64,000 bases of DNA, from the NCBI GenBank assembly GCA_047495785.1, contig JBLDXI010000013.1:3348001-3412000 (forward strand). Direction: 5' to 3'. The position numbers were made by a program, and so were the translations under genes. Position 1 is the first letter of the stretch, and each line of letters opens with the position of its first letter. This DNA is from Lepidodermella squamata (Eukaryota; Animalia; Gastrotricha). Positions 6,123 through 25,675 of this stretch are shown piece by piece. The notes beneath the pieces were generated by a model. The model made no database searches, was not told the origin of the DNA, and saw nothing but the letters and a program-made list of their open reading frames with translations.

Positions 6123-6445
6123 ATACAATTAGCCACCATAGTTTTGTTGTTGAAATCAATTTTGTAATGAAATATGCCCGAGTTATAAAGTGATCGAAAG
6201 TGACCTGCGTTATTTAAGTTGTTGCGTTGGAACTGGGGACAACGGCACAATGGCTATCTGTCTGTAAAAAGGCCAACATTCGCGAGTGGAAAGACAGGCT
6301 GTAGTTTGGAGATGAAAGCTGAATGATCAGTGGTACCAAACTTGCCCAATAGTTATTACAACAGAAATTGCTTCCTAGAATAATGATCAAGAGACAGTCG
6401 TGGGTGCCACCAGCACAGATAGGGAGAATTTATTAAATCACCATA

Positions 6446-8882
6446 TCAAATCCCGCAAACTTCTGACTTGGAATTAAAATAACATGCATTCAATGAAACG
6501 TCGCTATAATCGTTTCCATTCGAAGACAGAAGGACAAAAGTGTATGTGCCATGAGGGGGGCATTCGATTACAAGTTGTACGGATTCAGATTGACCCTGAA
6601 CACCTGTGTCGAATTCGCTGTAGTCGACAGTGACATTGTCTCGAGAAAAGTTCTTGATGCCGTAATATATGAGAAAATCAACTTCCATTATATCTTTGTC
6701 GAGACCATCATCATTTTCATCGTCATCGTCAGTCCCATCACCATTGTCCTTCTCATTATCGTCATCGTCCTTGTTAAACGAAATTTCTCCACTGTCTATT
6801 ACAGTCACAGGTAATCGCAATGAAATGATGAGTTTCGATGGAGCCGGCTTGCCAGGCCTTTGCTTTACTTCGAAAACAAATTGATAGATTGCATCTCCCG
6901 TTCCGGCAATATTTCCTTGAGTAACGCAGTTGTTGAGCTGGACGATATCTCCAGTAGGATCGTCCCCCATATAGTCTGAAATATCACATTTGGTGCGGTT
7001 GGCAACAACTCCGACTCTACGGAAGGCGTCTTCAATATCTCCAATTTGTTTTAGAGACATCCTTGAGATTGCAGCATATTTCAAGATTCCACATAACCCA
7101 TCTGCCATTTTGAGAAATGAACCCCACAAAAATCTGTTTGCGCCATAGAAAACTTTGTACGCCTCGTAAATATTCCACCCTCGCATTTGGGACAGCAAGT
7201 AGAAAGCGTGGTTGTAAATTCCACTGCAGATGTGCGCGTCCATCCTCGGCGTGTACTCGCTATATTTCTTTATTTGCTGAGCATCCGACGTCGGCTTTTT
7301 CAGATTCCGAACAAGATTACGACTCGCAGCATCCCGGGACTTCTGCGCATCGATGTCGAATAGCCAATCAGTTGAACCTCGGGCACAGGCACGGACCATC
7401 ATAGCGGTGATGTCGCTAAAGGCTGGATATATATAGTTTTTAATAACTGTTGTAGCGATCTTTTACCCACCTTCATTGATACATCCCATTTCTCCAGAGT
7501 AGTACATTTCGGAGAAGCGGGCGGTTAAAGCGTGGGCGATTTCGTGGGAAACAGAGTCTATGCTTGAGCAAGACGGGTACTCGTTTCTTAAGTCTCCGTT
7601 GCCTTAAAACAGAAGAGTTTTTTCATTCTGAGCAAAATCGATGTGTTTTCCTCACCAAAAAAAACTCCGTTCTCGTTCCAGAATGCCATAGCTCTCATCT
7701 GACCATAGTTTATGTGAACCCGCAAAGGTTTTCCTCCCGTGATAAGACCGAAATCGCGCAGATTCACTGTGAGCAAGCATCTCAGATGTAAGAATCTTTG
7801 TGAAAAAGTGGGTCCTACCATGTTCCGCCAGACATTTTTGCGTTTGAATAGCATAGTCTATGCAATCTGCGGCAACGCCATAACCTCCATTCACCTATAT
7901 CATCAGTAACGAATATTATGAAGCATTAGTTGGATCATGAAGATGATACCTCATCCTCAACAAGAGAACCGCATGGATAAGCAAATAGCTTGCTGTTGAC
8001 ACTGGAAGTATTGCCTTCCATATCGTAAATACTGAAAAATCCTTTGGAATGCTCAACTATGCACTCATCCAGTTCAGTGTGTCTATCTGTAAGATCGAGC
8101 TTGACTTTACGCTTGCCGATTTTTCTGTTGCCCCCTGAAGCGTCGACAGCAAATGCCGAGGTTGGTGTTATTACTATCATGGTGTCGTTTAATATGTCGT
8201 GCAAACAGACTATAAAGAAACGATTCAGTGATGTATCAATGCTTAAAAAATCATACAGTATCTCTGAGCTTCGTCGAGTTCGTTGATAATTGCGATATTT
8301 TCGTGCATTGTCATGAATGTCTGCTCCTCGAGCCATAAGGTTCGGTATGAAAAATTCCATAATTTAACACCAATTCCCTGTAAAATATCTGGCTTCGTCA
8401 TCATTCAGTTACGCTTCAAATCAGAAAAATACCTCCGTGAAGTTGTATTGTTCGGCAAGTCCCGCCATGCAAGCGATGTAGCCTTTAGAACTGCTGATAT
8501 TTTTCGCTGATTCGATTACTTGCTTGGCTAATTCGTCAAAACGAGGTATGTCGTCCAGTATTTGGCCACTCAATGCGTATTGTATGGCTTCTGTTTCGTC
8601 TTCCGTGAACACGAGATTGTAATTGTCCAGGCTATAGCCGCCAAAGACGAGATTGAACGTGAGCAAGCGTCGACCATCAGGCAGTTCCTCTTTATCAGCT
8701 AAAGTGAGGTTGCTATTCGGTGATAAGGCCAACAATTGCTCGATTGTCGGCCTTTCAGTGATATCGTCATTTTGTAGAACAGTGATATTCAGCCGATCGG
8801 AATTTTGTATCAAAAAGATTCCACTGGCATAGGTTTGTGAACAAATCCATGCCAATCCAACTACAATCAAGCTAAGTTTCAT
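6446..8882 (-). CDS. Secreted M4-family (thermolysin/vibriolysin/LasB-like) zinc metalloprotease, copy A, 7 exons, about 708 aa
   Basis: Signal peptide MKLSLIVVGLAWICSQTYA; FTP/PepSY-like propeptide; mature-like start VDASGGNRKIGK; HEIAH at 7546-7532; GCINEAFSD; DAHICSGIYNHAFYLL; AFRRVGV; C-terminal PPC-like domain. GT-AG introns at 8432-8378, 8256-8210, 7949-7895, 7818-7767, 7655-7603 and 7470-7423 give one continuous frame. Confidence 0.9.
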
Positions 8883-9214
8883 TGTTGGAACGATACAATA
8901 TGTGTTACATGGGCTTAAGCTGCGACGCATGCCACATTCTCACCTACTTGACAATGGGCTGGTATTCGAATAAAAGCGAGCTGCATTATTCTACCGCCTA
9001 GATAGACTTCAGCTAAAAGCTGCAGCAGTGGAACCAAACAGTAGAGTTGTTGCACGTCTTAGAACTATTAAAATGCCCCTTTCCTTGCCCTGTAAACTAT
9101 TCCATGATTATATGACTGATGGCTGACTCATCCGAATGAACATTTTTCTATGAAAGTTCAAACGATCGATGAGCGCGTTCCAAACAGAAGACCTCTACCG
9201 TCTTCGGAAATGCA

Positions 9215-9420
9215 TAGCGTTAGCGATGCGCCAAAACAACCACTTTATTCTTTACAGCTTTTTTATGGAAAGGTACGATCGACCCTTGAACGTCTATTCA
9301 AATTACGATAAGTACGATCAGTGTCAAATAGGCCGAATGTACTCCTTCTTTACGTTCGGCTCGTCAAAGTACGATCGAATGAGTCATCAAAGTGGTTGTT
9401 TTGGCGCGTCGCTAACGATA
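9215..9420. mobile_element. 206-bp MITE (TA-flanked, about 30-bp TIRs), copy 1
   Basis: Ends (t)agcgttagcgatgcgccaaaacaaccacttt and aaagtggttgttttggcgcgtcgctaacgata are inverted repeats; a near-identical copy lies at 14481-14686. Confidence 0.85.
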
Positions 9421-10375
9421 GGTAATATTAGGCCGGTACGGTGTTGAATTGAAATTGAAATGAAAGGGTTGGAAAACGTTTCCTGAAAACCTTAAGAATC
9501 AACTTTCTGGGAAGGGTGGCATACGGGCAACCTTTATCACGGCAGAAATGGTGATGAATCGCGACGGCTGGCAGAGGAAGACGCATTTAGCGGACAGAAC
9601 GTGTGTACCGATCCGTGCGTACAGATCAGGGCTGCTCTTTCACAAACATCACCCTGAGCAAGCAACCAGGTATCACCAAACCCGCAGCAGCGAGCAATAG
9701 CGAGCCGAAGGAGGAGCAGTTTTCTGCCACAATTTTTCGCAATCAATCAAAGCCGAGATAATCAAGCAACATTGGGCCGATCCAGTGGAGGAAGAACTTA
9801 ATGCTTCGTAGTAAAAAATACCGGTTGCTCGTTAAGAGCGACTGAACGCTAGACAGTAATGAGTAGCTGGACTTTGGCAATGAAAATCGAACAGCTAGTA
9901 TTCTGTTGTTGACGAATTGACCGATCGACGAAGCGACGCATCGACGGGGCAATAAAAAACGAATGATAAACAGCTATAGGCACAAACATGAATGCACTTG
10001 CTGCGCAGCAAAAATAGCAATGATTCATTTGCTCGGCAAAACCGACCTATCATGCATCTGTCTCGGACGCAAATAAACCTTGAATGAGACTTGAAATGTT
10101 TGCACCCTCAGCTTCGGCCCCGGACGACCGGAAAAAATTCCTCAGGCACTAGATTGGTCGATACGAGTCAACTCACTTCTCACATCTAGCTCCCTGGACG
10201 TGGTCGTCAAATCAAAATCCGATCTCACTAACACTTTATTACAAAAATAACGGGTCTGAGGGCATTTTGCATGGATCATCCTGTGATATTCTAGAACAAA
10301 AGCAGACTGATAAAAAATGGAGATGAATAGGTTATTCGTGAAGCAGATATGATGGAAAACATGACATCGATACAT

Positions 10376-11938
10376 CTATCGACGTTCGACTCTCACTCGC
10401 ACGGGCCCCTTCGGGATCATCACCAAATGAACAGTCACTGGTAAGGTTCTCGGCGCATCATCACTGTGAGGCTTAAACCGGTATTTTCGTAAAAGGTGGA
10501 TCAACGCCATTTCCAATTCGAGCATTGCAAACAGCTGGCCGGAACAGCGCCTCGGGCCGAGTCCGAACGCCAGGAAGGCACTTGCTGGTCGATTGCTGGT
10601 TGGGTAGTCATCGAGAAATCGATCCGGGTGGAATTCACGTGGACTAACCGGGCCCCAGAGCTCCTCGTTCATATGAATGCTCCACATGTCTACAAGGACG
10701 GAGTTTAACGTCGGGTCTACTTGATAACCGCCCAGCGATGTTTCTTCCAGAATTTGTCTGTTAACGATATTCAGGCCCTCAGGGTTCAGCCTAACTGTTT
10801 CCTTACAAACAGCGTTCAGAAACGTCATCTTGTTCATAACCGTGTCGTAATCTAGCGGTGTTGAAGGGTCGGGGTAAAACTGCAGAATTTCTTCGAGTAG
10901 ACGATCCTGAACATCTGGGTACATTGCAAGGTTGTACAACGCAAATGCCAGTGTAGTCGATGTTGTTTCATAACCAGCCATCAAAAACATATTGATATTA
11001 GTCTTCAGTTGGTCCATTGTCAGGCTTGGCCGGTTATTAACGCTGTCCTCCGCGAAATTCGTGACATTGATCAAGCTTTGCAGTAAATCCTTAGGTCTGT
11101 GAGTTTGATTCAGTAACCGCCTTCCCTGAACCATTTGATTAGTCCAACTTCGAAGCCATTCGTAGGGGGCAAGTGGACCGACGGCAACTTTCATCATGCC
11201 ATGCACGAATGCTTTGACAGATTGGCGAAGTGACGGGAAGATGTTGACCAGTTTAAACATCCATGATGAAGAAATAACGCCAGTCTGCACCATTTCTCGC
11301 GCCTCCTGGTAGACCTTCATTCCATGTTTATGATTCGGATGATCGCGGTCCATAAGGTGCAGTTCCGCGCCGAAAGCTGCTCTGCATAAGGCACTCATCG
11401 CAAAGCGCTGGGAAGGTTCGCGAACGTCAAACGCATGCTGGCCATTGCCAGAAATTTCAGCCACCAGATCGGATAGGCAATTCAGCTTTAGTTCGATGTT
11501 TGGCATGGCTTGCTTCATTGTCTCCCGATTGAAGAACTGACCAGCAGCGGTTCTCAGAATCCGCCAAAATTGTGTTGTTGCGATCAACATATTTATCATT
11601 GGATGCTTAGGTTCGGAGTCGCTGTTTGGTCGAATTGGGGCTAAATCCCGGCCGTTGAAGGCAGAGGTTTGTTTCAAACAAATTTGCTCAGCTAGGTCGA
11701 TGTGCGAGACGACGAGAGTTGGAATCATTCCTTCGTAAAATCCAAAAACATGGCCATATTTTTCTCTCCAAGCTTTGATGACCTCGTGTCGATTATCCCC
11801 TCTCAGCTCCAGTGAGTTGCCGAGTAGCCAGTGGGGCGCTGGTCCGGGAATGCCGAGCCTCTTGAATTCTTTGAAACAGAAATATTTCCTCCAGATGTAG
11901 AAGACAGCTGCAGCGAGAAGTAGAGCGATGAAAATCAT
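10376..11938 (-). CDS. Cytochrome P450, CYP3-clan-like, intronless, copy A
   Basis: N-terminal anchor, PGPAP hinge, I-helix AGYETT, K-helix ETVR, PDRF and heme motif FGLGPRRCSG. The first ATG is at 11938. Confidence 0.95.
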   Translation of the reverse strand: MIFIALLLAAAVFYIWRKYFCFKEFKRLGIPGPAPHWLLGNSLELRGDNRHEVIKAWREKYGHVFGFYEGMIPTLVVSHIDLAEQICLKQTSAFNGRDLAPIRPNSDSEPKHPMINMLIATTQFWRILRTAAGQFFNRETMKQAMPNIELKLNCLSDLVAEISGNGQHAFDVREPSQRFAMSALCRAAFGAELHLMDRDHPNHKHGMKVYQEAREMVQTGVISSSWMFKLVNIFPSLRQSVKAFVHGMMKVAVGPLAPYEWLRSWTNQMVQGRRLLNQTHRPKDLLQSLINVTNFAEDSVNNRPSLTMDQLKTNINMFLMAGYETTSTTLAFALYNLAMYPDVQDRLLEEILQFYPDPSTPLDYDTVMNKMTFLNAVCKETVRLNPEGLNIVNRQILEETSLGGYQVDPTLNSVLVDMWSIHMNEELWGPVSPREFHPDRFLDDYPTSNRPASAFLAFGLGPRRCSGQLFAMLELEMALIHLLRKYRFKPHSDDAPRTLPVTVHLVMIPKGPVRVRVERR

Positions 11939-12656
11939 TTTCAAAGTTTCTAAAAATTATTTTTTTTAAATGCAGGAAAATTGTAAAATTAAAGTCACGG
12001 CCCTCTACAGTACCCCTTACCCTTTCAAGCTCGTCATGTGATTCATTTGGAATTAGGAAACAGATCAATTTGAATCATTTTTACCCAATTTCTCACTTCG
12101 AAATACCATAAATGAAGGTGTTTATACCCTCTATTATCTATTAGGATGCGTTGGGTAGGGTGTCCGCCCATATTCGTTATATTTCTACACAGGTAGCCTT
12201 TTCATTGTCATAAGCTCTTCAGAACTCAAGATGAATCAGAGTCGCTCTTCCCGTAGTGAGCGTTCAAACTTTTTTCGTGATTGAACCTCAAGATTGTGTA
12301 TTTTATATCAGAAATTATGATGGTTTCTTTTTTGCCAGCTTGCCAAGACGAAGTTTCAGAATAGCGTATGTGTTTTTAACAATAAGGTTCATTCCCTCAG
12401 TCATTATAACGCGCTTGCCGTTATCTTCCTGCTCCCGCTACTTGCGTCAAATGATTTTTAAACATTTTCTGCCTTAGGATGTATAAAGTTCGCTTCCTTT
12501 TATTCAACTGTCGGCGCAAATACAGTAATGCGAAGTTAGTCATAACCATGTCATCCCCGCTTTTTTTATTGCTCATATCAAAGACACGTTTTCGGTGATT
12601 ACATTTCATTCACGGTTTTTTTAAGTTAGAAATGAGTCATGAGGTGTGTGCAAACG

Positions 12657-12860
12657 TGATTCACATTGATCTGCCTCCAAATTAATCATATGCCGAGCTT
12701 GAAAAGGTAAATGGTAGAGGGTCGTGACTTGAATTTTACAATTTCCTGCATTTAAAAAAACAGCTCTTAGAACCTTTGAAAATTATTTTCATCAATCTAC
12801 TTCTCGCTGCAGCTGTCTTCTACATCTGGAGGAAATATTTCTGTTTTAAAGAATTTATAA
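12657..12860 (+). pseudogene. Inverted duplicate of the CYP 5' flank and first ~25 codons (start codon changed to ATT)
   Basis: Reverse complement of about 11862-12077, e.g. ctacttctcgctgcagctgtcttctacatctggaggaaatatttctgtt. Confidence 0.85.
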
Positions 12861-13016
12861 GGGTACCATGTGCGGTTTTTTATCTGCTGAGTTAGGATTT
12901 CGATCGGGCCCCATGGCAACCGCCTTACTTGTCGAATGGATGATCCGGCCGTGCTGGCACCTCCACAAGTGACTGAAGTGCGACATCCCACTTGAACATG
13001 ACGCAGCTATTATTGC

Positions 13017-14447
13017 GTGCGTTTCTTTATTACCAGCCATTTTTTATTTTAAAGTTAAAATTAAACACTGACATTTCTTTATTATTTTATATTTTGAAAG
13101 GGTTCTCCAGTTAGCGGAATTGACGGTGAGCGGAACCAAATTTGCTGTAGCGGAACCAAATTTTAGACTTTTCTAGTGGTCTGAAATCGCTTTTCGAATA
13201 TATATCGCAGGTCAAGATTGGCCAATATATATATATATATAATTCTAGAAAATTCACCAGTGAATTCAGGGCAATATTCACTATAAGACGGAGTGTTCAA
13301 TTCAGAATTTATGCTTAGCCTAAAATTCGTAGGAATATTCAAAAAATGACTCTTGGCATACCTATTTCGAATTTGGTTCCGCTAAAAGATATTCCGTATT
13401 TTGAAATTAAAGTAAAAATCATTTCTTTATTCGATTTTTTCATCTTATTTTATAAAATAAAATGTCATTTCTTTATCACGTTTTTTGCATGATTTCGGAA
13501 AAGAAAATGTGAATGAAACAACACGTTTTGTTTAAAAACTACACACTGATAAAGAAATGAAAAAATGTGTTGTGGTTATTTTGAACGCATGAACGTGATT
13601 GCCCTAGACCCATAGGAGCATGAGAGCACCCGTGTGAACGCCGATCTCGAATTCGTCCCATCCACACATTATAGGTTGTCGGAAAGTTCAGTAGAACTTC
13701 GTTCAGCGACGTCACCTCAGCGGTGACGATTAAGCATGCGACACTTCAGCAACTGCCACTTCCGCAGAAGATTTGCAATCACATATTTCTGGGCAGTAGA
13801 CGTTTTCAGTAGGCGCAAATGTCGTTACACACTTTTTGTCTCGTTTGTCGTTGGCGCAAATGTGTTTGGCAGAGTAAAATTAAAGTCTAATGTGATACTA
13901 ATTTTCACTTGAACGCATGACAATATTATAATCATCTGGCTGAACTGGCATCTGCTGAAATTTCGCTAGTTTCATTTTTTCTTCAAACAACACGCTCCAC
14001 ACTATGACTGGATGTCGTAAGACCTCAGCTGAAATGACGTATGCTCTATAGTTGTGTTGCTGAATAGCACAACTGCCATAGTGGCAGTTGCTGAAGTGTC
14101 GCTGCACAAACATCGCCCTCGTATGTGACGTTGTTGAGCAAAGTTCTGCTGACCACTTTTCGAAGCCTAATTCTTTAGGGAGACATGAAGACTGCTTTCT
14201 CTGCAGAAAAGCCTCAGAATACATGCATAAAATTAGACCAGAACAGCTCATCCCCTGTTTTTCCTTGAGCTAAAAAATGAATTTTGTCGATGAACCGCGT
14301 GCTTTATTTACTCCATTTTATAAAATAAAATGATGAATAGAAACGTGAAAACACAAACAATTTATATACGATGAATATGGATGAAACAACCATTTTATTT
14401 TCATTTTATGTTAAAAAATGAAATAAAATTAGGATAAAGAAACGCAC
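13017..14447. mobile_element. Possible degenerate non-autonomous DNA transposon
   Basis: 14-bp terminal inverted repeat gtgcgtttctttat / ataaagaaacgcac, recurring atttctttat motifs, and an internal 23-bp inverted repeat (13739-13760 / 14080-14102). No TSD or transposase was found. Confidence 0.35.
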
Positions 14448-14480
14448 CCGAAGTCTCCTAATTCAGAAGCTTCTATGTTA

Positions 14481-14686
14481 TATCGTTAGCGACGCGCCAA
14501 AACAACCACTTTACTATTTATAGCTTTTTTTATGGAAAGTACGTTCGACTCTTGAACGTAAATTCAAATTACGATGAGTACGATCAGTGCTCAAAAAGCC
14601 GAATGTACTCCTTCTTTACGTTCGGCTCGTCAAAGTACGATCAAATGAGTCATCAAAGTGGTTGTTTTGGCGCGTCGCTAACGATA
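14481..14686. mobile_element. 206-bp MITE (TA-flanked), copy 2
   Basis: TA-tcgttagcgacgcgccaaaacaaccacttt ... aaagtggttgttttggcgcgtcgctaacga-TA forms a perfect TIR pair; the interior matches 9215-9420. Confidence 0.9.
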
Positions 14687-15079
14687 TTGTCTTTTGAAAA
14701 AATATTTATTTGAAAATTCAATTTAATAATTAGCAACTCGAAAAATGGCAGGAAGGATCGGATATTCAATTCTACTTCGATTTCTGGCCTCTGAATCATT
14801 GACGTTTCTGTGGGTTGTCGTCATAACTCAACGGCCGGCCGGGTTGGCCATCTTGGCCCAGTATTTCACAATTACGCAGCAAAAGCTGGCTTTGCAGCTT
14901 GTTGTGGTGTGTTGAGATGCAACAGTCGTCACGTTTGTCACAGAGCGTCGGACAGGGGTGTTGCGCGGAATGGCGTAGCACGAGCAGCGCGGCTGCCAAC
15001 GCAGGTTTGCGAAATTTCAAGATCCACTCTTTGTTGCCGAGAATGAGGAAATATGTTTTGGAAAGCATATTGAATACTA

Positions 15080-15996
15080 CACTACTGGACAAAATGTTTT
15101 GCGCATGCCCATTTTTGGAGTTTTTCGTTGATGTCGACGAGATCCTTCTAATATTCATCAATTATGCTTATGAATTCTTATTCTTTACATTGTGGGGAGT
15201 AGTTTGAGCCCAAGAACTTAATGATACGAGTCAGGGGGGCGTCTGGGCAATTAAGTTTAGGTCAATCGATCTAGGCTGGTTTCGGTTATCGATTGATTGA
15301 ATATCGGCCAATATTAAGGTATTATAGAATTTTTGATTCAGTAAAATGTGGCATTCTTTAACAATACGACCTAGCTGATCAATATTTTGAAAGCGGAGTT
15401 CAAATCCGAAAATCCGCCAAAAAGTTATTCAGTGATTTCTGATTTATCGATTTGTGATTTTTCCGATATTGGTGAAATCAGTCGATATTTCCGGGAAGGG
15501 ATATTCGATCGACACTGTTTAAAGAGTATTCGCCCATTATATATCTGGGTCTTTATAATAGCTTTCCTCTGGTTGAAATGTAACCTAAATTTATGTATCG
15601 ATCGATTATCGATAGAATGAAGGGAATCGATAAATCAGAAATCACTCATTAACTTCTTAACGGAAGTCCGGATTAGGATTCCGCTTTGAAAATATTGATT
15701 AGCTTGGCCATATTGATTAATCATCTCATATTTTGCTGCGTTGATAATTCGATTTCTTCTTTTATTGGCCGATATTCAATCAATCGATAACCGAAACCAG
15801 CCTAGATCGATTGACCTAAACTTAATTGCCCAGACGCCCCCCTGACTCGTATCATTAAGTTCTTGGGCTCAAACTACTCCCCACAATGTAAAGAATAAGA
15901 ATTCATAAGCATAATTGATGAATATTAGAAGGATCTCGTCGACATCAACGAAAAACTCCAAAAATGGGCATGCGCAAAACATTTTGTCCAGTAGTG
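15080..15996. mobile_element. 917-bp foldback element, Tc1/mariner-like, non-autonomous, with TA target duplication
   Basis: TA|CACTACTGGAC...GTCCAGTAGTG|TA. The ~235-bp arms (15080-15313 vs 15763-15996) appear perfectly inverted, with further degenerate inner arms (about 15370-15452 vs 15625-15705). Confidence 0.9.
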
Positions 15997-18193
15997 TATT
16001 TCCGACGGGTTCTTCAACAAGTCACGGTCAGGCAATTGGTTTTTCAGTCGCGTGAGATCCAATGGCACGGCACGACCGTCGCTAAAAATGCTTGATACAT
16101 AATCGCTACAACTCCACTCCATTTTCTCAACGGTTTTCTTCACATTAAAGCCGGCAACATAACAAACGATAGAGAGATAAACATTTATTAAAAATGTGGA
16201 CTGCCTAATTCAGTAATAATTAGGTTGCCTTGCGACACAGTGAGTATACATTATATTTTAAAAAAAATTGTGTTTTTTGTGGTTGAAATAGATATGGATT
16301 GAATCTTTAAGAATCGATTTTGTAATGTCAGAAAGTAGTTGTTTTGGTAATTGCCATTCCTTAAAAAGTTTCAATGTTTGTTTAGTTATAGTTCCACGGC
16401 TACCCAGGTAGAGTCCTTGCACGGTAACTTCGTCCAGCTTCCATTGTTCACAGACTTGTCAACTTCAATAAGGGGCAATTCGAAAAGTGCCTGCACTTTC
16501 TAGCAAACTACATCCAATTCGACTGCCTCAATCTCTTTTTCGACCTTCGCCATATCTCTTCATCCACGTCTGATTTCGGCGGAATTAGAAATAATGATTG
16601 ATCATCGCGTAGCGACGGAGGCCGGTCGTATTAGTTTGCGACGTTTTTAATGAAAAGCAATCGAACCTGGTCAGTTTTTATTAGAAACCCAATGTAAAAC
16701 TTGTGAACTTGTAACTTGTGATTAACTGGTGAAAATCCAGCCATCAAAAATAAACCAAGCAGTCTAGAATTCTCTGCTCTACCAACAGACTGAAAATTCG
16801 AAAAGAAATAATAAAAATTGGCAAGGCTAGGTGGTGGCGACTAGTGCTGGGCTCTCTTTTGGCGTTACAATGCGAAGATGCATGATTTGATCACTTTATT
16901 ATTGTAAAAATGACCATGTTTTGCCTCACTCGATCAAACGACTTTTTGGCCACAGGCTGGGCAGGAAATGCATTATTCAGTGTATCTTTATATTCAGCCC
17001 GGCCTGCTCGACCGCAAAAAAGCCGGGCAGTGCCCATGAACATTTTTTTTTATTCTGCCCGCACAGCCCGATTAGCCCGTATCGTCCGCAGAGCATTCAG
17101 CAATTTTCTCTGGTTTCCCGCACTTCCCGGCCAGCCCGTAACGCCCGGCCTTTTGAGACCGGGCGAAGCCGGGCGATGAAGCAAAACATTGACCAGGCCC
17201 GCGATTTCACAGCAAATAATCATAAAAATGACTTAATTAAATAACTTGAATACGCGATTAATCATCTCAGCCTAACGCCTAACCTAATCTGTGATCGCGT
17301 TATACCGATTTTCCAATTACGGAAGCGATTTTTCGAATTTTCCTGGGGTTACGACTTGGAAAAGGGCCAGCGGTATCGCGGTGAACGACCTTGACGAGCG
17401 CGAAGGAGATAAAGTAGTCCATGAAAAACTCATCGGTACCGAAAACAAACGATTACAAATCACAAAATTAGCATTTGACAGAGCTAATTAGTGTCAACTT
17501 GAACAATCCACATTATCGACAGAGTAAAACGATGTGCATTAAATTATCATCTTTTTCAATTCATTATAAAATTGCGGATTAGCATGAATCACGCGCATTG
17601 TCAAAAACGTGCTCAGGCGAAGTAATTTTCCGGATTTGCCCGATAACATTCAACAATTTTTCCGCGTTTCCCCGCTTTCCCGCGGGAGAGTTGGGCTGTA
17701 TTGCTGAATGTATTTGGGCGCCCGCGTTTCCCGGAGTTTTTTATTGCTTTTTTCCTGCGATTCCCAGAAAATCCTAGCTCATCCGCACCAAAACATGGGC
17801 GAAAAAAAATGTATGCTCATTGAACGCCCAGCCCGGATTTCTTATTGTTTTCCCGTGAAATCCGACGGGCTGCCCCGGGCGAGACGGGGAATAAAAAAAT
17901 ACACCCTAGTGTCGAGTTCATAAAGTATTAGTCCCAAGCCCGGACGACCGGAATAATCACTCAGTCACAAGATTGCCTGAATTGGCTTGCGCGGTCGCAT
18001 AAATTCGGGCGATCCAACTCACTTCTCAAACGCAGGTCATGGTCGTCAAATCGAAATTTGGTCTCAATAAAACTTTATTAAAAAAATAACTGGTCATCCT
18101 CTGATATTCTAGAACAAAAACAGACTGATACAAAATGGAGATGAATAGGTTATTTGTGAAGGAGAGTTAAGGTAAAACATGAGATAGAGACAT

Positions 18194-19756
18194 CTATCGA
18201 CGTTCGACTCTCACTCGCACGGGCCCCTTCGGGATCATCACTAAATGAACAGTCACCGGTAAGGTTCTCGGCGCATCATCACTGTGAGGCTTGAACCGGT
18301 ATTTTCTTAAAAGGTGGATCAACGCCATTTCCAATTCGAGCATTGCAAATAGCTGGCCGGAACAGCGCCTCGGGCCGAGTCCGAAAGCCAGGAAGGCACT
18401 TGCGGGTCGATTGCTGGTTGGGTAGTCGTCGAGGAATCGATCCGGGTGGAATTCGCGTGGGCTAACCGGGCCCCAGAGCTCCTCATTCATATGAATGCTC
18501 CACATGTCTACAAGGACGGAGTTTAACGTCGGGTCTACTTGATAACCGCCGAGCGATGTTTCTTCCAGAATTTGTCTGTTAACGATATTCAGGCCCTCAG
18601 GGTTCAGCCTAACTGTTTCCTTACAAACAGCGTTCAGAAACGTCATCTTGTTCATAACCGTGTCGTAATCTAGCGGTGTTGAAGGGTCGGGGTAAAACTG
18701 CAGAATTTCTTCGAGTAGACGATCCTGAACATCTGGGTACATTGCAAGGTTGTACAGCGCAAATGCCAATATAGTCGAAGTTGTTTCATAGCCAGCCATC
18801 AAAAACATATTGATATTTGTCTTCAGTTGGTCCATTGTCAGGCTTGGCCGGTTATTAACGCTGTCATCCGCGAAATTCGTGACATTGACCAAGTTTTGCA
18901 GCAAATCCTTAGGTCTGTGAGTTTGATTCAGTAACCGCCTTCCCTGAACCATTTGATTAGTCCAACTTCGAAGCCATTCGTAGGGGGCAAGTGGACCGAC
19001 GGCAACTTTCATCATGCCATGCACGAATGCTTTGACAGATTGGCGAAGTGACGGGAAGATGTTGACCAGTTTAAACATCCATGATGAAGAAATAACGCCA
19101 GTCTGCACCATCTCTCGCGCCTCCTGGTAGACCTTCATACCATGTTTGTGATTCGGATGATCGCGGTCCATAAGGTGGAGTTCCGCGCCGAAAGCTGCTC
19201 TGCATAGGGCACTCATCGCAAAGCGCTGTGATGGTTCGCGGACATCAAACGCATGCTGGCCCTCGCCAGAAATTTCAGCCACCAGATCGGATAGGCAATT
19301 CAACTTTAGTTCGATGTTTGGCATGGCTTGCTTCAGTGTCTCTCGATTGAAGAACTGACCAGCAGCGGTTCTCAGAATCCGCCAAAATTTTGTTGTTGCG
19401 ATCAACATATTGTTCATAGGATGCTTAGGTTCGGAGTCGCTGTTTGGTTGAATTGGGGCGAAATCCCGGCCGTTGAAGGCAGAGGTTTGTTTCAAACAAA
19501 TTTGCTCAGCTAGGTCGATGTGCGAGACGACGAGAGTTGGAATCATTCCTTCGTAATATCCAAAAACATGGCCATGTTTTTCTCCCCAAGCTTTGATGAC
19601 CTCGTGTCGATTATCCCCTCTCAGCTCCAGTGAGTTGCCGAGTAGCCAGTGGGGCGCTGGTCCGGGAATGCCGAGCCTCTTGAATTCTTTGAAACAGAAA
19701 AACTTCCTCCAGATGTAGAAAGCAGATGCAGCGAGAAGTAGAGCGGTAAAAATCAT
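18194..19756 (-). CDS. Cytochrome P450, CYP3-clan-like, intronless, copy B
   Basis: Same length and motifs as copy A (AGYETT, ETVR, PDRF, FGLGPRRCSG); differences cluster in the N-terminal third. Confidence 0.95.
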   Translation of the reverse strand: MIFTALLLAASAFYIWRKFFCFKEFKRLGIPGPAPHWLLGNSLELRGDNRHEVIKAWGEKHGHVFGYYEGMIPTLVVSHIDLAEQICLKQTSAFNGRDFAPIQPNSDSEPKHPMNNMLIATTKFWRILRTAAGQFFNRETLKQAMPNIELKLNCLSDLVAEISGEGQHAFDVREPSQRFAMSALCRAAFGAELHLMDRDHPNHKHGMKVYQEAREMVQTGVISSSWMFKLVNIFPSLRQSVKAFVHGMMKVAVGPLAPYEWLRSWTNQMVQGRRLLNQTHRPKDLLQNLVNVTNFADDSVNNRPSLTMDQLKTNINMFLMAGYETTSTILAFALYNLAMYPDVQDRLLEEILQFYPDPSTPLDYDTVMNKMTFLNAVCKETVRLNPEGLNIVNRQILEETSLGGYQVDPTLNSVLVDMWSIHMNEELWGPVSPREFHPDRFLDDYPTSNRPASAFLAFGLGPRRCSGQLFAMLELEMALIHLLRKYRFKPHSDDAPRTLPVTVHLVMIPKGPVRVRVERR

Positions 19757-20389
19757 TATCAAGGTTTCTCAGAAATTTCTTTTTATATGCAGGAAAATTT
19801 ATTTTTAATTCACCAGAAGAAGGCTGTTATTTATACCCTTTATTATCTATCAGGATTTGTTGGGTAGGATGTCCGCCCGCATTTGTTTGATTTCTACAGG
19901 TAACCTTTACATCGTCATAAGCCCTTTAGAACATTAAATGAATCAGAGGCGCTCTTCCGGTGGTGTGCCTTTGTTCACACTTTTTCGTCATTCAACCTAA
20001 CTATATCGTGTTTTTTATATCAGTTTTTTGTTAGCTGTCCTAGACAACATGTCAAAATAACGTGTGTTTTACACAATAAGGTTCTTTTTCTCGGTCATTC
20101 TGACCTTTTTGCCGTAATCTGATCTTCCTGCTTCCGCTACATGCGTCAAATAATTTGTTAACATAATTTTCTGCTGCAGAATGTATAACGTGTGCATCCG
20201 CTAATTCATCTTTCCTCTCAAATACTGTTATACGAACGTATCATTTGTGTTAGTCATAACCAGTCATCCCAGCTCTTATTAATGCACGTTAACGTTAACT
20301 GTGGTGCACGTTTTCTGTGAATGAGTTTCATTCACGGATTCACGGTACCTATTTCAAAGTTGGAAAAGAGGCGGTGTGTGCAAAAATGG

Positions 20390-20590
20390 TTTAAATTGAG
20401 CTACTTTTGAAGTCGAATTTGAAATGGTATAGGGTACTGTAAACGTTGAGGGGGTCGTGACTCAAATTAAACAATTTTCCTGCATTTGAAAATATAATTA
20501 TTTGAAGAAACTTTTAGAATGATCATCGCTGCACCTGTCTTCTATACATCGGGAGGGAATATTTCTGTTTCAAAGACGTTATAAGGGTTC
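20390..20590 (+). pseudogene. Second, more decayed inverted CYP 5' fragment
   Basis: ggggtcgtgactc...ttttcctgcattt...gctgcacctgtcttctatacatcgggagggaatatttctgtttcaaaga is homologous to 12657-12860. Confidence 0.75.
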
Positions 20591-20792
20591 CCCTGTGGTT
20601 TTTTATCTGAGGAGTTGATATTTTGAGGGCCCCATTGACAACTCCCCAACTTGCCCAAAGGAGGATTGCGGGCACCTCCTCAAGGGACTTGGGCTTGAAT
20701 TGGGCGATATTAGGCTTGAACCTAACACAGATATTATAGAAGCTAATCAACGGAAAATTATTTTCATCAGGAGCAGTTATTTAATCACTATA

Positions 20793-23284
20793 TCAAGTCC
20801 CGCAAACGTCTGACTCGGAGTTAAAATAACAGGCATTCAATGAAACGTCACTATAATCCATTCCATTCGAAGATAGAAGAATAAAAGTGTATGTGCCAAT
20901 AGGAGGACATTCAATTACAAGTTTTATGGATTCAGATTGATGCTGCACGCCTGCGTCGAATTCGCCGTAGTCGATGACGACATGTCGTGAATAGTTTTTG
21001 AAGCCATAATATATGAGAAAATCAACTTCCATTAGATCTTCATCGATACAATCATCATTTTCATCTACATCGTCATCGTCATTCGCATCATCTTCATCGT
21101 CATTCTCATCGCCACTGTCCATCTCATCATCGTCGCAATCTTGGCATTTTGAGCAGTCATCGCCCTTGCTCAACGGAATTTCTCCGTCATCTATTCCAGA
21201 CACAGGTAATTGCAACGATATTATGAGTTTCGATGGAGCCGGTTTGCCAGGCCTTTGCTTTACTTCGAAAACAAATTGAAACATTTGTTCGCCTGTTCCA
21301 GCAATATTTTCCTGAGTAACGCAGTTGTTGAGCTGAACGTTGTCTCCAGGAGGGTCCCCCAAATAGTCCGAAATATCACATTTGGTGCGGTTGATAACTA
21401 CCCCGACTCTACTGAAGGCGTCTTCAATATCTTCGACTTCTTTAGATGTCATCCCTGTGACTGCAGCGTATTCCATGATTCCACATAAGCCATCTGCCAT
21501 TTTCAAAAATCCACTCCAGAAAAATCTGTTTCCGCCGTAGAAAACCTTGTAAGCCTTGTAAATGTTCCACCCTCGCATTTGAGACAGCAAGTAGAAAGCG
21601 TGGTTGTAAATTCCGCTGCAGATGTGTACGTCCACCCTCGGCGTGTACTCGCTATATTTCTTTATTTGCTGAGCATCCGACGTCGGTTTTTTCAGATTCC
21701 GAACTAAATTACGGCTCGCAGCGTCCCGGGACTTCTGGGCATCGATGTCGAAGAGCCAGTCAGTTGAACCTCGGACACAAGCACGGACCATCATTGCGGT
21801 GATGTCGCTGAAAGCTGATTTCAAATCGTTTTCATAGTGTGTATCATTATTTCATTTACCTTCGTTCATACAGCCCATTTCGCTCGAGTAAAATAGTTCA
21901 GAGAAGCGGGCGGTTAAAGCGTGGCCGATTTCGTGGGAAACAGAGTCAATGCTCGAGCAAGACGGGTACTCGTTTGAGAAATCTCCATTCCCTGATTTCG
22001 AACATTTAAGCAGCACCGCTGCATGCCAGAATACTGCTTACCGAAAAAAAGGCCATTCTCGTTCCAGAAAGCTATTGCTCGCATTCTACCGTAATTGATA
22101 TGAATTCGCAACGGTTCACCATCCGTTATTAAACCAAAATCATTCAACCCCACTGGATAACCTTTGTATCAGCAGTGTTTTGTTTTTATGAGATTGGCTC
22201 TTACCATGCTTTGCGAGACATTTCTGCGTCTGAATAGCGTAATCGATGCAATCTGCGGCAATGCCGTAGCCTCCATTCACCTATATTACGAAAATTAAGA
22301 ATTCTGAATTAGATCATAAAGATGATACCTCGTTCTCTATAAGAGCTCCGCAGGGATATGCTAATGGCTTACTATCGACACTCGAAGTGTTGCCTTCCAT
22401 ATCGTAAACACTGAAAAATCCTTTGGAGTGTTCAACAATACACTCATCCAGTTCAGTGTGCCTATCCGTAAGATCGAGCTTCACTTTACGCTTGCCAATT
22501 CTTCTGTTGCCCCCTGTAGCGTCGACAGCAAAAGTCGAGGTTGGTGATATTAGTAGCATGGTATCGTTTAATATGTCGTACATACAGACTATTAAGATGG
22601 AGATGATAGAGTAACGATTCATTGAAGTATATAAACACTGAAGAAATCATACAATATCTCTGTGCTTCGTCGAGTTCGTTGATAATCACGATATTTTCGT
22701 GCATTGTCATGGATGTCCTGAACTCATCGAGCCATAAAGATCTGTCGGAATCGTTACTCAATTCAACCCCAATCCCCTGTAAAATGTCGCTTCGTCATCA
22801 TCCTGCCATGCTTCACAATTAGGAAAGCTACCTCCGTGAAGTTGTATTGCTCGGCAAGTCCCGCCATGCAAGCGATGTAGGCTGTCTGACTGCTTATATT
22901 CTGCGCGGCTTCGATTACTCGTTTGGCTAATTCGTCAAAACGAGGTATTTCGTCCAGTATTTGGCCACTCAATGCGTATTGTATGGCTTCTGTTTCGTCT
23001 TCCGTGAACACGAGATTGTAATTGTCCAGGTTATAGCCGCCAAAGACGAGATTGAACGTGAGTAAGCGTCGACCATCAGGCAGTTCTTCGTCATCGGCTA
23101 ACGTAAGGTTGCTATTCGGTGATAAGTCCAGCAATTCCTCGATCGTCGGCTTTTCGAAGATATAGTCATTTAGAATTGTGACATTCAGCCGATCGGAATT
23201 TTTTATCAAAAAGATTCCACTGGCTTTGGTTTCTAAACAAATCCAAATTAACACGGGAAAAGCTTGAACCAAGCTAAGTTTCAT
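20793..23284 (-). CDS. Secreted M4-family (vibriolysin/LasB-like) zinc metalloprotease, copy B, 7 exons, about 725 aa
   Basis: Signal peptide; HEIGH at 21935-21921; GCMNEAFSD; DVHICSGIYNHAFYLL; PPC-like C-terminus. GT-AG introns at 22831-22777, 22652-22589, 22328-22281, 22204-22153, 22041-21992 and 21859-21815 sit at the same positions as in copy A and give an intact frame. Confidence 0.9.
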
Positions 23285-25626: not shown

Positions 25627-25675
25627 CTGTTTCGTTTTAAAGTAACACGCACCTAGAAACACGAAATTTGAACCG

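What the first reader, a model, noticed from the sequence alone, without database searches (positions are those of the whole stretch)
6446..23284. Two intron-containing bacterial-type M4 (vibriolysin/LasB-like) proteases in an animal genome: candidate domesticated horizontal transfer
Seen: two minus-strand genes (6446-8882 and 20793-23284), fragmented in the ORF track, rebuild into intact ~708- and ~725-aa proteins through six 45-64-nt GT-AG introns at identical positions. Both keep HExxH (HEIAH/HEIGH), the third zinc ligand (NEAFSD), and Tyr, Arg and His at positions matching the thermolysin catalytic helpers. Known: signal-FTP-PepSY-M4-PPC is the architecture of secreted gammaproteobacterial proteases, and several segments track Pseudomonas LasB as I recall it (GGNRKIGK vs GGNQKIGK; VNGGY vs VNGAY; SGIYNHAFYLL vs SGVYNRAFYLL; AFRRVGV vs AFSTVGV). 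M4 is not part of the standard animal peptidase repertoire. Inference: an old bacterial-to-animal transfer gained introns before duplicating and is kept as a secreted digestive, defensive or matrix-remodelling enzyme. Introns and flanking animal genes argue against contamination.
Basis: partly seen in the sequence, partly recalled or inferred. Interest (0 to 1): 0.92.

Follow-up and report, generated by a model that had tools for sequence, protein, structure and literature searches.

The report
Intron-bearing vibriolysin-type proteases in an invertebrate
Two intact neighbouring genes in an animal genome encode secreted zinc proteases of a family otherwise almost entirely bacterial (M4, vibriolysin/LasB type); they carry animal-style introns and are under purifying selection, so they are most likely an old, domesticated bacterial gift, although the donor and the date of the transfer cannot be resolved.

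Summary
Both minus-strand genes (6446-8882 and 20793-23284) splice through six GT-AG introns of 45-64 nt, at identical positions and phases, into intact proteins of 708 and 725 aa that are 82% identical. Splicing rebuilds a continuous M4 catalytic core. All zinc ligands, all catalytic residues and both LasB-type disulfide pairs are kept. dN/dS between the copies is 0.24.

The architecture is signal peptide, FTP propeptide, M4, M4_C, then a PPC-type beta-sandwich with a 29- or 46-residue acidic insert. PepSY was not detected.

The flanking genes are animal genes: teneurin, a class C GPCR and CYP3-clan P450s. This rules out contamination.

A bacterial origin is the best reading, for three reasons: the whole prepro-M4-PPC layout is bacterial, the nearest relatives are overwhelmingly Gamma- and Betaproteobacteria, and the family is patchy in animals.

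- The genes sit on a branch of 3 substitutions per site.
- No protein among 15 billion exceeds about 41% identity.
- No donor stands out.
- AU tests reject neither a bacterial placement nor a common origin with a RefSeq-annotated gastropod M4 clade (Aplysia, Elysia, Haliotis).

So M4 in animals is not unique. Verdict: a real, new, very divergent member of a known family and a known kind of event. Interest is moderate.

The parts
6446..8882 (-). M4 protease gene 1 (708 aa). It has 7 exons: 8882-8433, 8377-8257, 8209-7950, 7894-7819, 7766-7656, 7602-7471 and 7422-6446 (stop codon included).
   Evidence: Splicing gives an intact ORF. Peptidase_M4_C scores 1.5e-16 in exon 7. The spliced core matches M4 proteins at about 1e-48.
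20793..23284 (-). M4 protease gene 2 (725 aa). It has 7 exons: 23284-22832, 22776-22653, 22588-22329, 22280-22205, 22152-22042, 21991-21860 and 21814-20793.
   Evidence: Splicing gives an intact ORF that is 82% identical to gene 1, with the same intron positions and phases.
8823..8882 (-). Predicted signal peptide of gene 1 (MKLSLIVVGLAWICSQTYA|SG). The equivalent stretch in gene 2 is at about 23284-23219.
   Evidence: Hydrophobic core with mean Kyte-Doolittle value 2.5 over residues 3-13, followed by small residues at -3 and -1. This rests on inspection only; no signal-peptide predictor was available.
8634..8684 (-). FTP propeptide motif LPDGRRLLTFNLVFGGY of gene 1 (gene 2: 23083-23033).
   Evidence: A profile built from 77 M4 pro-regions hits the N-terminus at E 2e-8 for g1 and 1e-5 for g2. 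hhalign gives P 1.2e-5, probability 81%. Pfam's own FTP model does not reach threshold.
7532..7546 (-). HEIAH zinc-binding and catalytic motif of gene 1 (gene 2, HEIGH: 21935-21921).
   Evidence: Aligned to thermolysin H142-E143-x-x-H146, with Y157 and E166 also matched.
7412..7477 (-). NEAFSD motif of gene 1 (third zinc ligand Glu383 and Asp387), split by intron 6 (7470-7423). In gene 2 it lies at 21866-21804 and is split by 21859-21815.
   Evidence: FSD aligns to pseudolysin residues 166-168.
7199..7240 (-). DAHICSGIYNHAFY of gene 1: Asp445 and His447, the equivalents of pseudolysin Asp221 and His223 (thermolysin Asp226 and His231). Gene 2: 21632-21591.
   Evidence: Alignment to 1ezm_A.
6449..6985 (-). 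C-terminal PPC-type beta-sandwich domain of gene 1 (gene 2: 20796-21377).
   Evidence: hhalign against a PPC profile from homologues gives P 0.0014 and covers the whole profile. The AF2 model made with a 31-row alignment has pLDDT 71.5. Vibriolysin, HapA and EmpA align over model residues 2-312, whereas LasB, which lacks PPC, aligns only over 2-140. The PDB PPC domain 5sv5 and the ColG collagen-binding domain match the C-terminal part.
6692..6778 (-). Acidic Asp/Glu/Asn-rich insert inside the PPC domain of gene 1 (29 aa). In gene 2 it is 46 aa, at 21036-21173, and contains CxxCxxC.
   Evidence: It is disordered in both models and absent from all aligned homologues.
6423..9014 (.). Duplicated DNA block holding gene 1. 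Its partner is 20770-23388, at 80% identity.
   Evidence: blastn of the window against itself.

Best explanation
These are two expressed-looking paralogues of a secreted zinc metalloprotease zymogen of the M4 family, vibriolysin/pseudolysin subgroup. The ancestor of the gene came whole from a bacterium, most likely a Gamma- or Betaproteobacterium, into the germ line of this invertebrate's lineage.

After the transfer the gene took on host codon usage and a polyadenylation signal. It gained six short spliceosomal introns and diverged strongly. Only then did it duplicate, giving these two copies and, according to unchecked notes of this scan, at least three more elsewhere in the genome.

Inferred mechanism, by homology with vibriolysin and LasB:
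- The signal peptide directs secretion.
- The FTP-containing propeptide folds and inhibits the enzyme until it is cut off by the enzyme itself.
- The mature enzyme cleaves peptide bonds with a zinc ion held by His359, His363 and Glu383. Glu360 acts as the base, and Tyr374 and His447 stabilise the transition state.
- The C-terminal PPC-type sandwich, here with a long acidic loop, targets or regulates the enzyme.

What is shown: gene structure, intactness, conserved residues, fold, purifying selection and the animal context.
What is inferred: the transfer itself, secretion, autoprocessing, activity and the physiological role (digestion, defence or matrix remodelling).
For: - Gene models and identical intron positions.
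- dN/dS is 0.24, with dS 0.42.
- Introns are 63% identical against 86% for exons.
- AATAAA or ATTAAA lies just after the stop codons.
- GC3 and codon usage are host-like.
- Of 59 columns that are at least 90% conserved in 102 homologues, 46 are kept in both copies. These include every zinc and catalytic residue and the four cysteines of the two LasB disulfides.
- PDB alignments confirm the catalytic residues.
- The FTP pro-region is supported at E 2e-8.
- PPC is supported by hhalign P 0.0014 and by fold matches.
- Among 1.84 billion cluster representatives the 632 hits are M4 proteins. Every one whose context I read on a dense contig is bacterial.
- The best 80 matches among 185,579 prokaryotic species genomes are all Gamma- or Betaproteobacteria, at 30-38% identity.
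- The flanking genes are animal genes: teneurin, an ANF-receptor GPCR, CYP3-clan P450, ML and PAN.
- None of the 14 introns of the Elysia M4 gene coincides with the six here, and the Aplysia copy has no intron. Introns were therefore gained separately.
Against: - No donor can be named. Identity to every relative is only 28-38%, and the pair sits on a branch of 3.0 substitutions per site.
- AU tests leave the placement open: p 0.34 with the gastropod clade and p 0.50 within the bacterial core.
- In the free tree the nearest rows are M4 genes from eukaryote-like, sparsely coding contigs (P0046, P0114, P0072/P0398). This could mean an older eukaryotic lineage rather than a lineage-specific transfer.
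- The PPC fold model was made with an alignment that contains PPC-bearing homologues, which could bias it.
- Some conserved positions differ, for example the Asp of the FGDGD calcium site is Asn. Activity is therefore not guaranteed.
Confidence: 0.72

Rival explanations
1. The genes belong to an older M4 lineage that has lived in animals for a long time, for example in spiralians. It would have been acquired once, or inherited, before this lineage and the gastropods split, and then lost in most phyla. On this reading the genes are not a lineage-specific transfer.
For: - A strongly supported gastropod M4 clade exists (Aplysia, Elysia, Haliotis and unnamed relatives).
- The AU test does not reject joining the window pair to it (p 0.34).
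- The rows nearest to the window pair in the free tree lie on eukaryote-like contigs.
Against: - No intron position is shared with Elysia (0 of 6), and the Aplysia copy is intronless.
- The gastropod proteins are much closer to Aeromonas and Vibrio enzymes (42-53% identity) than to the window proteins (about 31%).
- The bacterial-core placement is just as likely (log-likelihood difference 0.08, p 0.50).
- The distribution in animals is very patchy.
- The branch is long, which makes attraction to other divergent rows likely.
Confidence: 0.2
2. The copies are catalytically dead or re-purposed M4-like proteins, for example binding proteins or inhibitors, or they are untranscribed relics that merely look intact.
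For: - 13 of 59 highly conserved columns differ, including a probable calcium-site Asp to Asn change.
- The sequences are extremely divergent.
- There is no expression evidence.
- The PPC domain carries an unusual acidic insert.
Against: - All zinc ligands, the catalytic Glu, Tyr, His, Asp and Arg, and both disulfide pairs are kept in both copies.
- dN/dS is 0.24 overall and 0.12 in the catalytic N-domain.
- All 12 splice sites and both ORFs are intact at dS 0.42, which is not expected of relics.
Confidence: 0.06
3. Bacterial contamination or a chimeric assembly placed bacterial genes among animal genes.
For: The family is bacterial, and no close relative of this genome exists in public data to cross-check.
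Against: - Both copies carry six spliceosomal GT-AG introns.
- Host-like GC3 and codon usage, and polyadenylation signals.
- Animal P450 genes lie 1.0-1.5 kb away on the same strand.
- The duplicated blocks contain both the M4 and the P450 genes.
- No bacterial protein is more than about 41% identical.
Confidence: 0.01

Closest known systems
Vibriolysin-type M4 proteases: Vibrio proteolyticus neutral protease (Q00971), V. cholerae hemagglutinin/protease HapA (P24153), V. anguillarum EmpA (P43147)
   Same: - Same order of parts: signal peptide, FTP propeptide, M4 catalytic domain, helical M4_C domain, C-terminal PPC domain.
- These are the best whole-length fold matches, covering model residues 2-312 at E 5e-16 to 3e-14.
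- All catalytic residues are shared.
   Different: - Only 22-23% identity in the fold alignments, and at most 38% to any bacterial genome.
- No detectable PepSY.
- A 29- or 46-residue acidic insert inside the PPC domain.
- Encoded in an animal genome with six introns.
Pseudolysin / LasB elastase of Pseudomonas aeruginosa (PDB 1ezm; MEROPS family M4)
   Same: - Best solved-structure match by sequence, 1.7e-18 over the M4_C domain.
- The motifs SGxYNxAFYLL and AFxxVGV are shared.
- Asp221, His223, Arg198 and the Cys270 disulfide position are conserved.
   Different: - LasB has no PPC domain. Its fold alignment stops at model residue 140.
- About 33% identity in that domain.
Gastropod 'elastase-like' / 'hemagglutinin-proteinase-like' M4 genes (Aplysia californica XP_012937926 and paralogues; Elysia chlorotica EGW08_018134; Haliotis asinina XP_067678922)
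   Same: - M4 vibriolysin-like genes resident in animal genomes.
- Some carry introns: Elysia has 14.
- They occur as several paralogues.
- A common origin with the window genes is not rejected (AU p 0.34).
   Different: - They are much closer to Aeromonas and Vibrio enzymes (42-53% identity) than to the window proteins (about 31%).
- No intron position is shared.
- Pfam does not see PPC in them, and they have no acidic insert.
- They form their own 100/100 clade that excludes the window pair in the free tree.
Thermolysin (Bacillus thermoproteolyticus; PDB 1kei), type enzyme of family M4
   Same: HExxH, Tyr157 and Glu166 align residue for residue. The two-lobe fold is the same.
   Different: It is a more distant subgroup: fold E about 1e-4 against 1e-8 to 1e-9 for LasB, ProA and MCP-02. 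It has no PPC domain.

Membership tests
Peptidase family M4 (thermolysin family) | HExxH motif that supplies two zinc ligands and the catalytic Glu | tested here: met
   HEIAH (g1 359-363) and HEIGH (g2 361-365) align to thermolysin H142, E143 and H146.
Peptidase family M4 (thermolysin family) | Third zinc ligand: a Glu 20 residues after the second His, in the motif NExxSD (the Glu-zincin signature) | tested here: met
   NEAFSD in both copies. Glu383 aligns to thermolysin E166, and FSD to pseudolysin 166-168. The motif is rebuilt only after removal of intron 6.
Peptidase family M4 (thermolysin family) | Transition-state helpers Tyr157 and His231, with Asp226 and the substrate-binding Arg203 (thermolysin numbering) | tested here: met
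   Tyr374, His447, Asp445 and Arg422 align to thermolysin Y157 and to pseudolysin H223, D221 and R198.
Peptidase family M4 (thermolysin family) | Significant match to both Pfam domains, Peptidase_M4 (PF01447) and Peptidase_M4_C (PF02868) | tested here: inconclusive
   M4_C is met at 1.5e-16, with 61 bits against a cutoff of 24. PF01447 could not be scanned on the spliced protein, because exons 3-6 are too short one by one and a spliced sequence has no reference. As a substitute, the spliced core aligns over residues ~200-545 to proteins that carry both domains, at about 1e-48.
Peptidase family M4 (thermolysin family) | Zinc-dependent, phosphoramidon-sensitive endopeptidase activity | not testable with these tools
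   This needs a recombinant enzyme assay.
Vibriolysin-type prepro-architecture (signal-FTP-PepSY-M4-PPC) | N-terminal FTP propeptide motif | tested here: met
   Pfam FTP is not significant. A profile of 77 homologous pro-regions gives E 2e-8 and 1e-5, and hhalign gives P 1.2e-5, centred on LPDGRRLLTFNLVFGGY.
Vibriolysin-type prepro-architecture (signal-FTP-PepSY-M4-PPC) | PepSY domain between FTP and the catalytic domain | tested here: not met
   No Pfam hit. hhalign of residues 112-212 against the pro-region profile gives P 0.28, no better than shuffled sequences. About 90 residues occupy the place of PepSY, so a diverged PepSY is not excluded.
Vibriolysin-type prepro-architecture (signal-FTP-PepSY-M4-PPC) | C-terminal PPC (bacterial pre-peptidase C-terminal) domain | tested here: met
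   No Pfam hit, and an HMM search is not significant. hhalign gives P 0.0014 over the full PPC profile. The fold model matches PPC-bearing vibriolysins over both domains, and also the PDB PPC domain 5sv5 and the ColG CBD 1nqj (TM by target 0.53-0.66). Caveat: the model's alignment contained PPC homologues. A language-model lead to calpain domain III was not borne out by any fold hit.
Bacterium-to-animal horizontal gene transfer, domesticated | Physical integration in host DNA with host gene features | tested here: met
   Six spliceosomal introns, polyadenylation signals, host-like GC3 and codon usage, and animal genes on both sides of each copy.
Bacterium-to-animal horizontal gene transfer, domesticated | A phylogeny that nests the gene within a bacterial clade with support | tested here: inconclusive
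   The pair lies on a branch of 3.0 substitutions per site. AU tests reject neither the bacterial core (p 0.50) nor the gastropod clade (p 0.34).
Bacterium-to-animal horizontal gene transfer, domesticated | Evidence of function in the host (selection, expression) | tested here: inconclusive
   Purifying selection is shown: dN/dS 0.24 overall and 0.12 in the catalytic N-domain.

The most novel reading that the evidence does not exclude
Vibriolysin-type M4 proteases may form an unrecognised, long-resident protease family of invertebrates. On this reading they were acquired once early in a protostome (spiralian) ancestor and kept only in scattered lineages: gastropods, this animal, and the unidentified eukaryotes behind P0046, P0114 and P0072. 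In this genome the family would have expanded to five or more genes plus a stand-alone propeptide gene, which could act as a cognate protease-inhibitor system with an acidic-loop PPC domain as a new targeting module.
Probability: 0.15. Interest if true: 0.7.

Novelty: new member of a known kind. Interest (0 to 1): 0.5.

Why it matters
Functional bacterial genes in animal genomes show how animals gain new biochemistry. A complete secreted bacterial protease zymogen that gained introns, then multiplied and stayed under selection would add a major protease family (M4) to the short list of domesticated transfers.

M4 enzymes such as LasB, HapA and vibriolysin are bacterial virulence and nutrient-scavenging proteases. 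An animal using one could be digesting protein, remodelling matrix or attacking microbes with a borrowed tool.

The work also shows that M4 genes sit unremarked in gastropod RefSeq annotations and on several eukaryote-like contigs, and I found no paper describing them. A systematic survey of M4 in invertebrates therefore looks worthwhile.

The value is tempered in two ways. Transfers of this kind are already well documented for other enzyme families. And here neither the donor nor the timing nor the expression can yet be established.

Tried and rejected
- **Pfam on single exons.** Only exon 7 hits, with M4_C. Exons 1-6 and the C-terminal domain give nothing, even at E up to 10.
- **PDB searches.** Exons 3 and 5, and the C-terminal profile, gave only chance or low-complexity matches.
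- **ESM Atlas.**
  - Exon 1 gave noise (score 0.69).
  - The C-terminal domain pointed to calpain domain III (score 0.90). I rejected this lead because no calpain appeared in the fold searches, whereas PPC and collagen-binding domains did.
- **AF2 of the C-terminal domain with only the two paralogues.** pLDDT was 49, too poor to search with.
- **A plain HMM of PPC against the window proteins.** Not significant. Only hhalign, which tolerates the acidic insert, gave a signal.
- **PepSY.** Not detectable.
- **Naming the organism.**
  - The P450 finds only about 30% identity to an annelid, a nemertean and ticks, and 43% to an unnamed ENA protein.
  - Searching papers for the accession of one eukaryote-like assembly found nothing.
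  - Pfam on ORFs next to the eukaryote-like M4 genes found nothing useful.
- **Literature.** Five searches found no description of M4 transfer into animals.
- **Earlier findings by sequence.** Blank.
- Scanning the spliced full-length protein against Pfam, and predicting its whole structure, were not done. A spliced sequence has no reference and may not be typed in.

Full report
**1. What is in the sequence**

Reading the minus strand of 6400-9000 and 21780-23340 and translating it in three frames shows the coding sequence hopping between frames at short GT...AG intervals.

- Joining seven exons of gene 1 gives 2127 nt with no internal stop, that is 708 aa. The exons are 8882-8433, 8377-8257, 8209-7950, 7894-7819, 7766-7656, 7602-7471 and 7422-6446.
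- The same procedure for gene 2 gives 2178 nt, 725 aa. The exons are 23284-22832, 22776-22653, 22588-22329, 22280-22205, 22152-22042, 21991-21860 and 21814-20793.
- Introns are 55/47/55/52/53/48 nt in gene 1 and 55/64/48/52/50/45 nt in gene 2, all GT-AG.
- Intron positions and phases are the same in the two genes (after residues 150, 190, 277, 302, 339 and 383 of gene 1; phases 0,1,0,1,1,1).
- Each intron, if retained, would shift the frame or bring in a stop.
- The proteins are 82% identical. Exons are 86% identical in DNA and introns 63%.
- AATAAA (gene 1) or ATTAAA (gene 2) lies 10-15 nt after the stop codon.

Gene 1 also has an in-frame ATG 48 nt upstream (8930) that gene 2 lacks. The shared MKLSL start, followed at once by a hydrophobic signal-like segment, is the likely initiator.

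**2. It is an M4 protease, and it looks functional**

Pfam finds Peptidase_M4_C in exon 7 (1.5e-16). In the sandbox, however, the spliced protein aligns without breaks over residues ~200-545 to proteins that carry both M4 Pfam domains, at E about 1e-48 against a 150-sequence database.

Conserved motifs are rebuilt only by splicing:
- Intron 6 cuts NE|AFSD.
- Intron 5 cuts the FG|NGD segment that matches FGDG of the family.

Alignments printed by the PDB search show:
- HExxH, Tyr157 and Glu166 of thermolysin;
- Asp168, Arg198, Asp221, His223 and Cys270 of pseudolysin.

Of 59 alignment columns that are at least 90% conserved in 102 homologues, 46 are kept in both copies. These include every zinc and catalytic residue and four cysteines at the positions of the two LasB disulfides. 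The departures include the first Asp of FGDGD, a calcium-site residue in thermolysin to my knowledge, which is Asn here.

The Nei-Gojobori dN/dS between the copies is 0.24 (dS 0.42, dN 0.10). It is 0.12 in the catalytic N-domain. Both genes have therefore been under purifying selection since the duplication.

**3. Architecture**

- *N-terminus.* It has a hydrophobic signal-like segment.
- *FTP.* Pfam does not see FTP or PepSY. A profile built from the pro-regions of 77 homologues does hit the N-terminus, at E 2e-8 for gene 1 and 1e-5 for gene 2. hhalign gives P 1.2e-5, centred on LPDGRRLLTFNLVFGGY, the counterpart of the FTP core (...RyqQtYkGiPVwG).
- *PepSY.* The following ~90 residues, where PepSY would lie, show no similarity (P 0.28, the same as shuffled sequences).
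- *C-terminal domain, first attempts.* The C-terminal 179 or 194 residues have no Pfam hit. A model made from the two paralogues alone was poor (pLDDT 49, all beta). A language-model search suggested calpain domain III.
- *C-terminal domain, PPC support.*
  - hhalign against a PPC profile from bacterial homologues covers the whole profile at P 0.0014 and places the acidic stretch as an insert before the 'DaDLYv' strand (here MEVDFLIYYG).
  - A second model of exon 7, made with a 31-row alignment, reached pLDDT 71.5, with the sandwich strands at 71-90.
  - Vibriolysin, HapA and EmpA align to it over residues 2-312, that is both domains, at E 5e-16 to 3e-14. LasB, which has no PPC, aligns over 2-140 only.
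  - In the PDB the helical part matches LasB, ProA and MCP-02, and the C-terminal part matches a PPC domain (5sv5) and the ColG collagen-binding domain (1nqj, 2o8o). No calpain appears.

I accept PPC, with one caveat: the alignment used for the model held PPC-bearing rows.

The acidic insert is 29 aa in gene 1 and 46 aa with CxxCxxC in gene 2. It is absent from all homologues and is the least conserved part of the proteins.

**4. Host context**

The window is animal DNA:
- a teneurin gene (38.6-48.4 kb; Teneurin NHL, TTR, FN-plug, GBD and RHS domains) with AT-rich GT-AG introns of 125-165 nt;
- a class C GPCR with an ANF-receptor domain (1485-3833);
- two single-exon P450s (10376-11944 and 18194-19762);
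- an ML-domain gene and a PAN-domain gene.

The P450 is of the CYP3 clan. Its best named relatives (an annelid, a nemertean, ticks) are only about 30% identical, so the animal belongs to a poorly sampled group that I could not name.

M4 GC3 (0.46-0.48) and codon usage fall within the range of the neighbouring genes.

The M4 genes lie in duplicated blocks together with the P450s:
- M4: 6423-9014 ~ 20770-23388, 80% identical;
- P450: 10169-11982 ~ 18015-19799, 94% identical;
- spacer: 12121-12974 ~ 19830-20689, 69% identical.

Contamination is excluded.

**5. Where the genes come from**

An exhaustive HMMER search with exon 7 against representatives of about 15 billion proteins found 632 hits. 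None was better than E 4e-23 or about 41% identity. Neither this genome nor any close relative is in public protein space.

Hits whose contigs I could read fall into two kinds.
- *Bacterial, densely coding:* P0001, P0002, P0008.
- *Eukaryote-like, sparsely coding:* P0010/P0153, P0046, P0114 and P0398, the last from NCBI assembly GCA_022702875.1.

Named animal members exist:
- Aplysia californica 'elastase-like' (intronless, on a 1.2-Mb scaffold);
- Elysia chlorotica EGW08_018134 (15 exons; I mapped 14 introns);
- Haliotis asinina 'hemagglutinin/proteinase-like'.

A careful ML tree (69 rows, 316 columns, LG+C20 PMSF) recovers a gastropod clade at 100/100. It puts the window pair on a branch of 3.0 substitutions per site, next to other divergent rows, several of them from eukaryote-like contigs.

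AU tests show the placement is unresolved:
- holding the pair with the gastropod clade costs 5.1 log-likelihood units (p 0.34);
- holding it with the 43-row bacterial core costs 0.08 units (p 0.50).

Pairwise identity of the core to every group is 28-34%. A scan of one genome per prokaryotic species returns only Gamma- and Betaproteobacteria (Burkholderiaceae, Vibrio, Aeromonas, Shewanella, Pseudoalteromonas, Rheinheimera and others) at 30-38% identity, with none standing out.

None of the six introns coincides with any of Elysia's fourteen. The nearest are two columns away and in a different phase.

**6. Reading**

The complete bacterial prepro-M4-PPC layout, the overwhelmingly proteobacterial family and the patchy animal distribution make bacterial ancestry by horizontal transfer the best explanation.

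Shared intron positions show that the introns were gained before the two copies arose. The long branch, the host-like composition and dS 0.42 between the paralogues show that the gene has been resident for a long time.

It remains open whether the transfer was specific to this lineage (my preference, because no introns are shared and the gastropod genes are far closer to Aeromonas and Vibrio) or shared with gastropods or other invertebrates.

The mechanism (secreted zymogen, propeptide-assisted folding and inhibition, autoprocessing, zinc-dependent endopeptidase, PPC as a targeting or regulatory module) is inferred from what is known of vibriolysin, LasB and thermolysin. The physiological role is unknown.

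**7. Novelty and limits**

Five literature searches found no account of M4 genes acquired by animals. RefSeq does already annotate such genes in gastropods, so the statement that M4 is absent from animals is too strong.

Other first-stage notes on this genome were not checked here. They report a tandem triplet of M4 genes, a stand-alone M4 propeptide gene and several other candidate transfers. So the scan has met this family before, on other DNA of the same genome.

The whole spliced protein could be neither scanned with Pfam nor folded, because it has no reference.

I rate this as a new, highly divergent member of a known enzyme family and of a known kind of event. Interest is moderate.

Noticed in passing
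window 10376-11944 and 18194-19762 (minus strand): Two single-exon CYP3-clan cytochrome P450 genes of 522 aa each. Their DNA is 94% identical, far more alike than the adjacent M4 copies (80%) or the spacer (69%). This suggests a later duplication or gene conversion. The gene order is M4-P450-spacer ... P450-spacer-M4, all on one strand, which is not a simple tandem repeat.
   Followed up: partly
window 24451-25662 (minus strand): An ORF of 403 aa with a signal-like N-terminus and long runs of GGNPGMMGPN-type Gly/Met/Pro/Asn repeats. It has no Pfam family. It may be a secreted low-complexity structural or adhesive protein.
   Followed up: no
window 38673-48358 (minus strand): A teneurin gene in a few very large exons (Teneurin GBD, TTR, FN-plug, NHL, RHS/YD), interrupted by AT-rich GT-AG introns of 125 and 165 nt. 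This gives the host's ordinary intron style. The M4 introns are shorter (45-64 nt).
   Followed up: partly
window 1485-3833 (minus strand): A single-exon class C GPCR of 782 aa with an ANF-receptor ligand-binding domain. It matches the scan's note of an expanded GABA-B-like receptor family in this genome.
   Followed up: no
window 21036-21173 (gene 2) and 6692-6778 (gene 1): The acidic insert in the PPC domain differs in length between the copies (46 against 29 aa). It carries CxxCxxC only in gene 2. It is the fastest-changing part of the proteins.
   Followed up: partly
L001 and L006 (ENA ERZ25071447), L009 (ENA ERZ24900295), L010 (NCBI GCA_022702875.1, contig JAKGBN010044113.1); the P0046 contig of ENA ERZ26052378 (no locus held): Intronless, full-length M4 genes (FTP-M4-M4_C, some with PPC) lie on long, sparsely coding, AT-rich contigs that look eukaryotic. 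Vibriolysin-like genes therefore seem to have entered several unidentified eukaryotes besides gastropods.
   Followed up: partly
L008 (Elysia chlorotica RQTK01000865.1) against L007 (Aplysia californica KB941583.1): Within the gastropod M4 clade one gene has 14 introns spread over 11.8 kb, while a 51-61% identical relative in Aplysia is a single exon. Either many introns were gained or the gene was retrocopied within the clade.
   Followed up: partly
window 8930: Gene 1 has an extra in-frame ATG 16 codons upstream of the conserved MKLSL start. Gene 2 has none, so the true start of gene 1 is uncertain by 16 residues.
   Followed up: no
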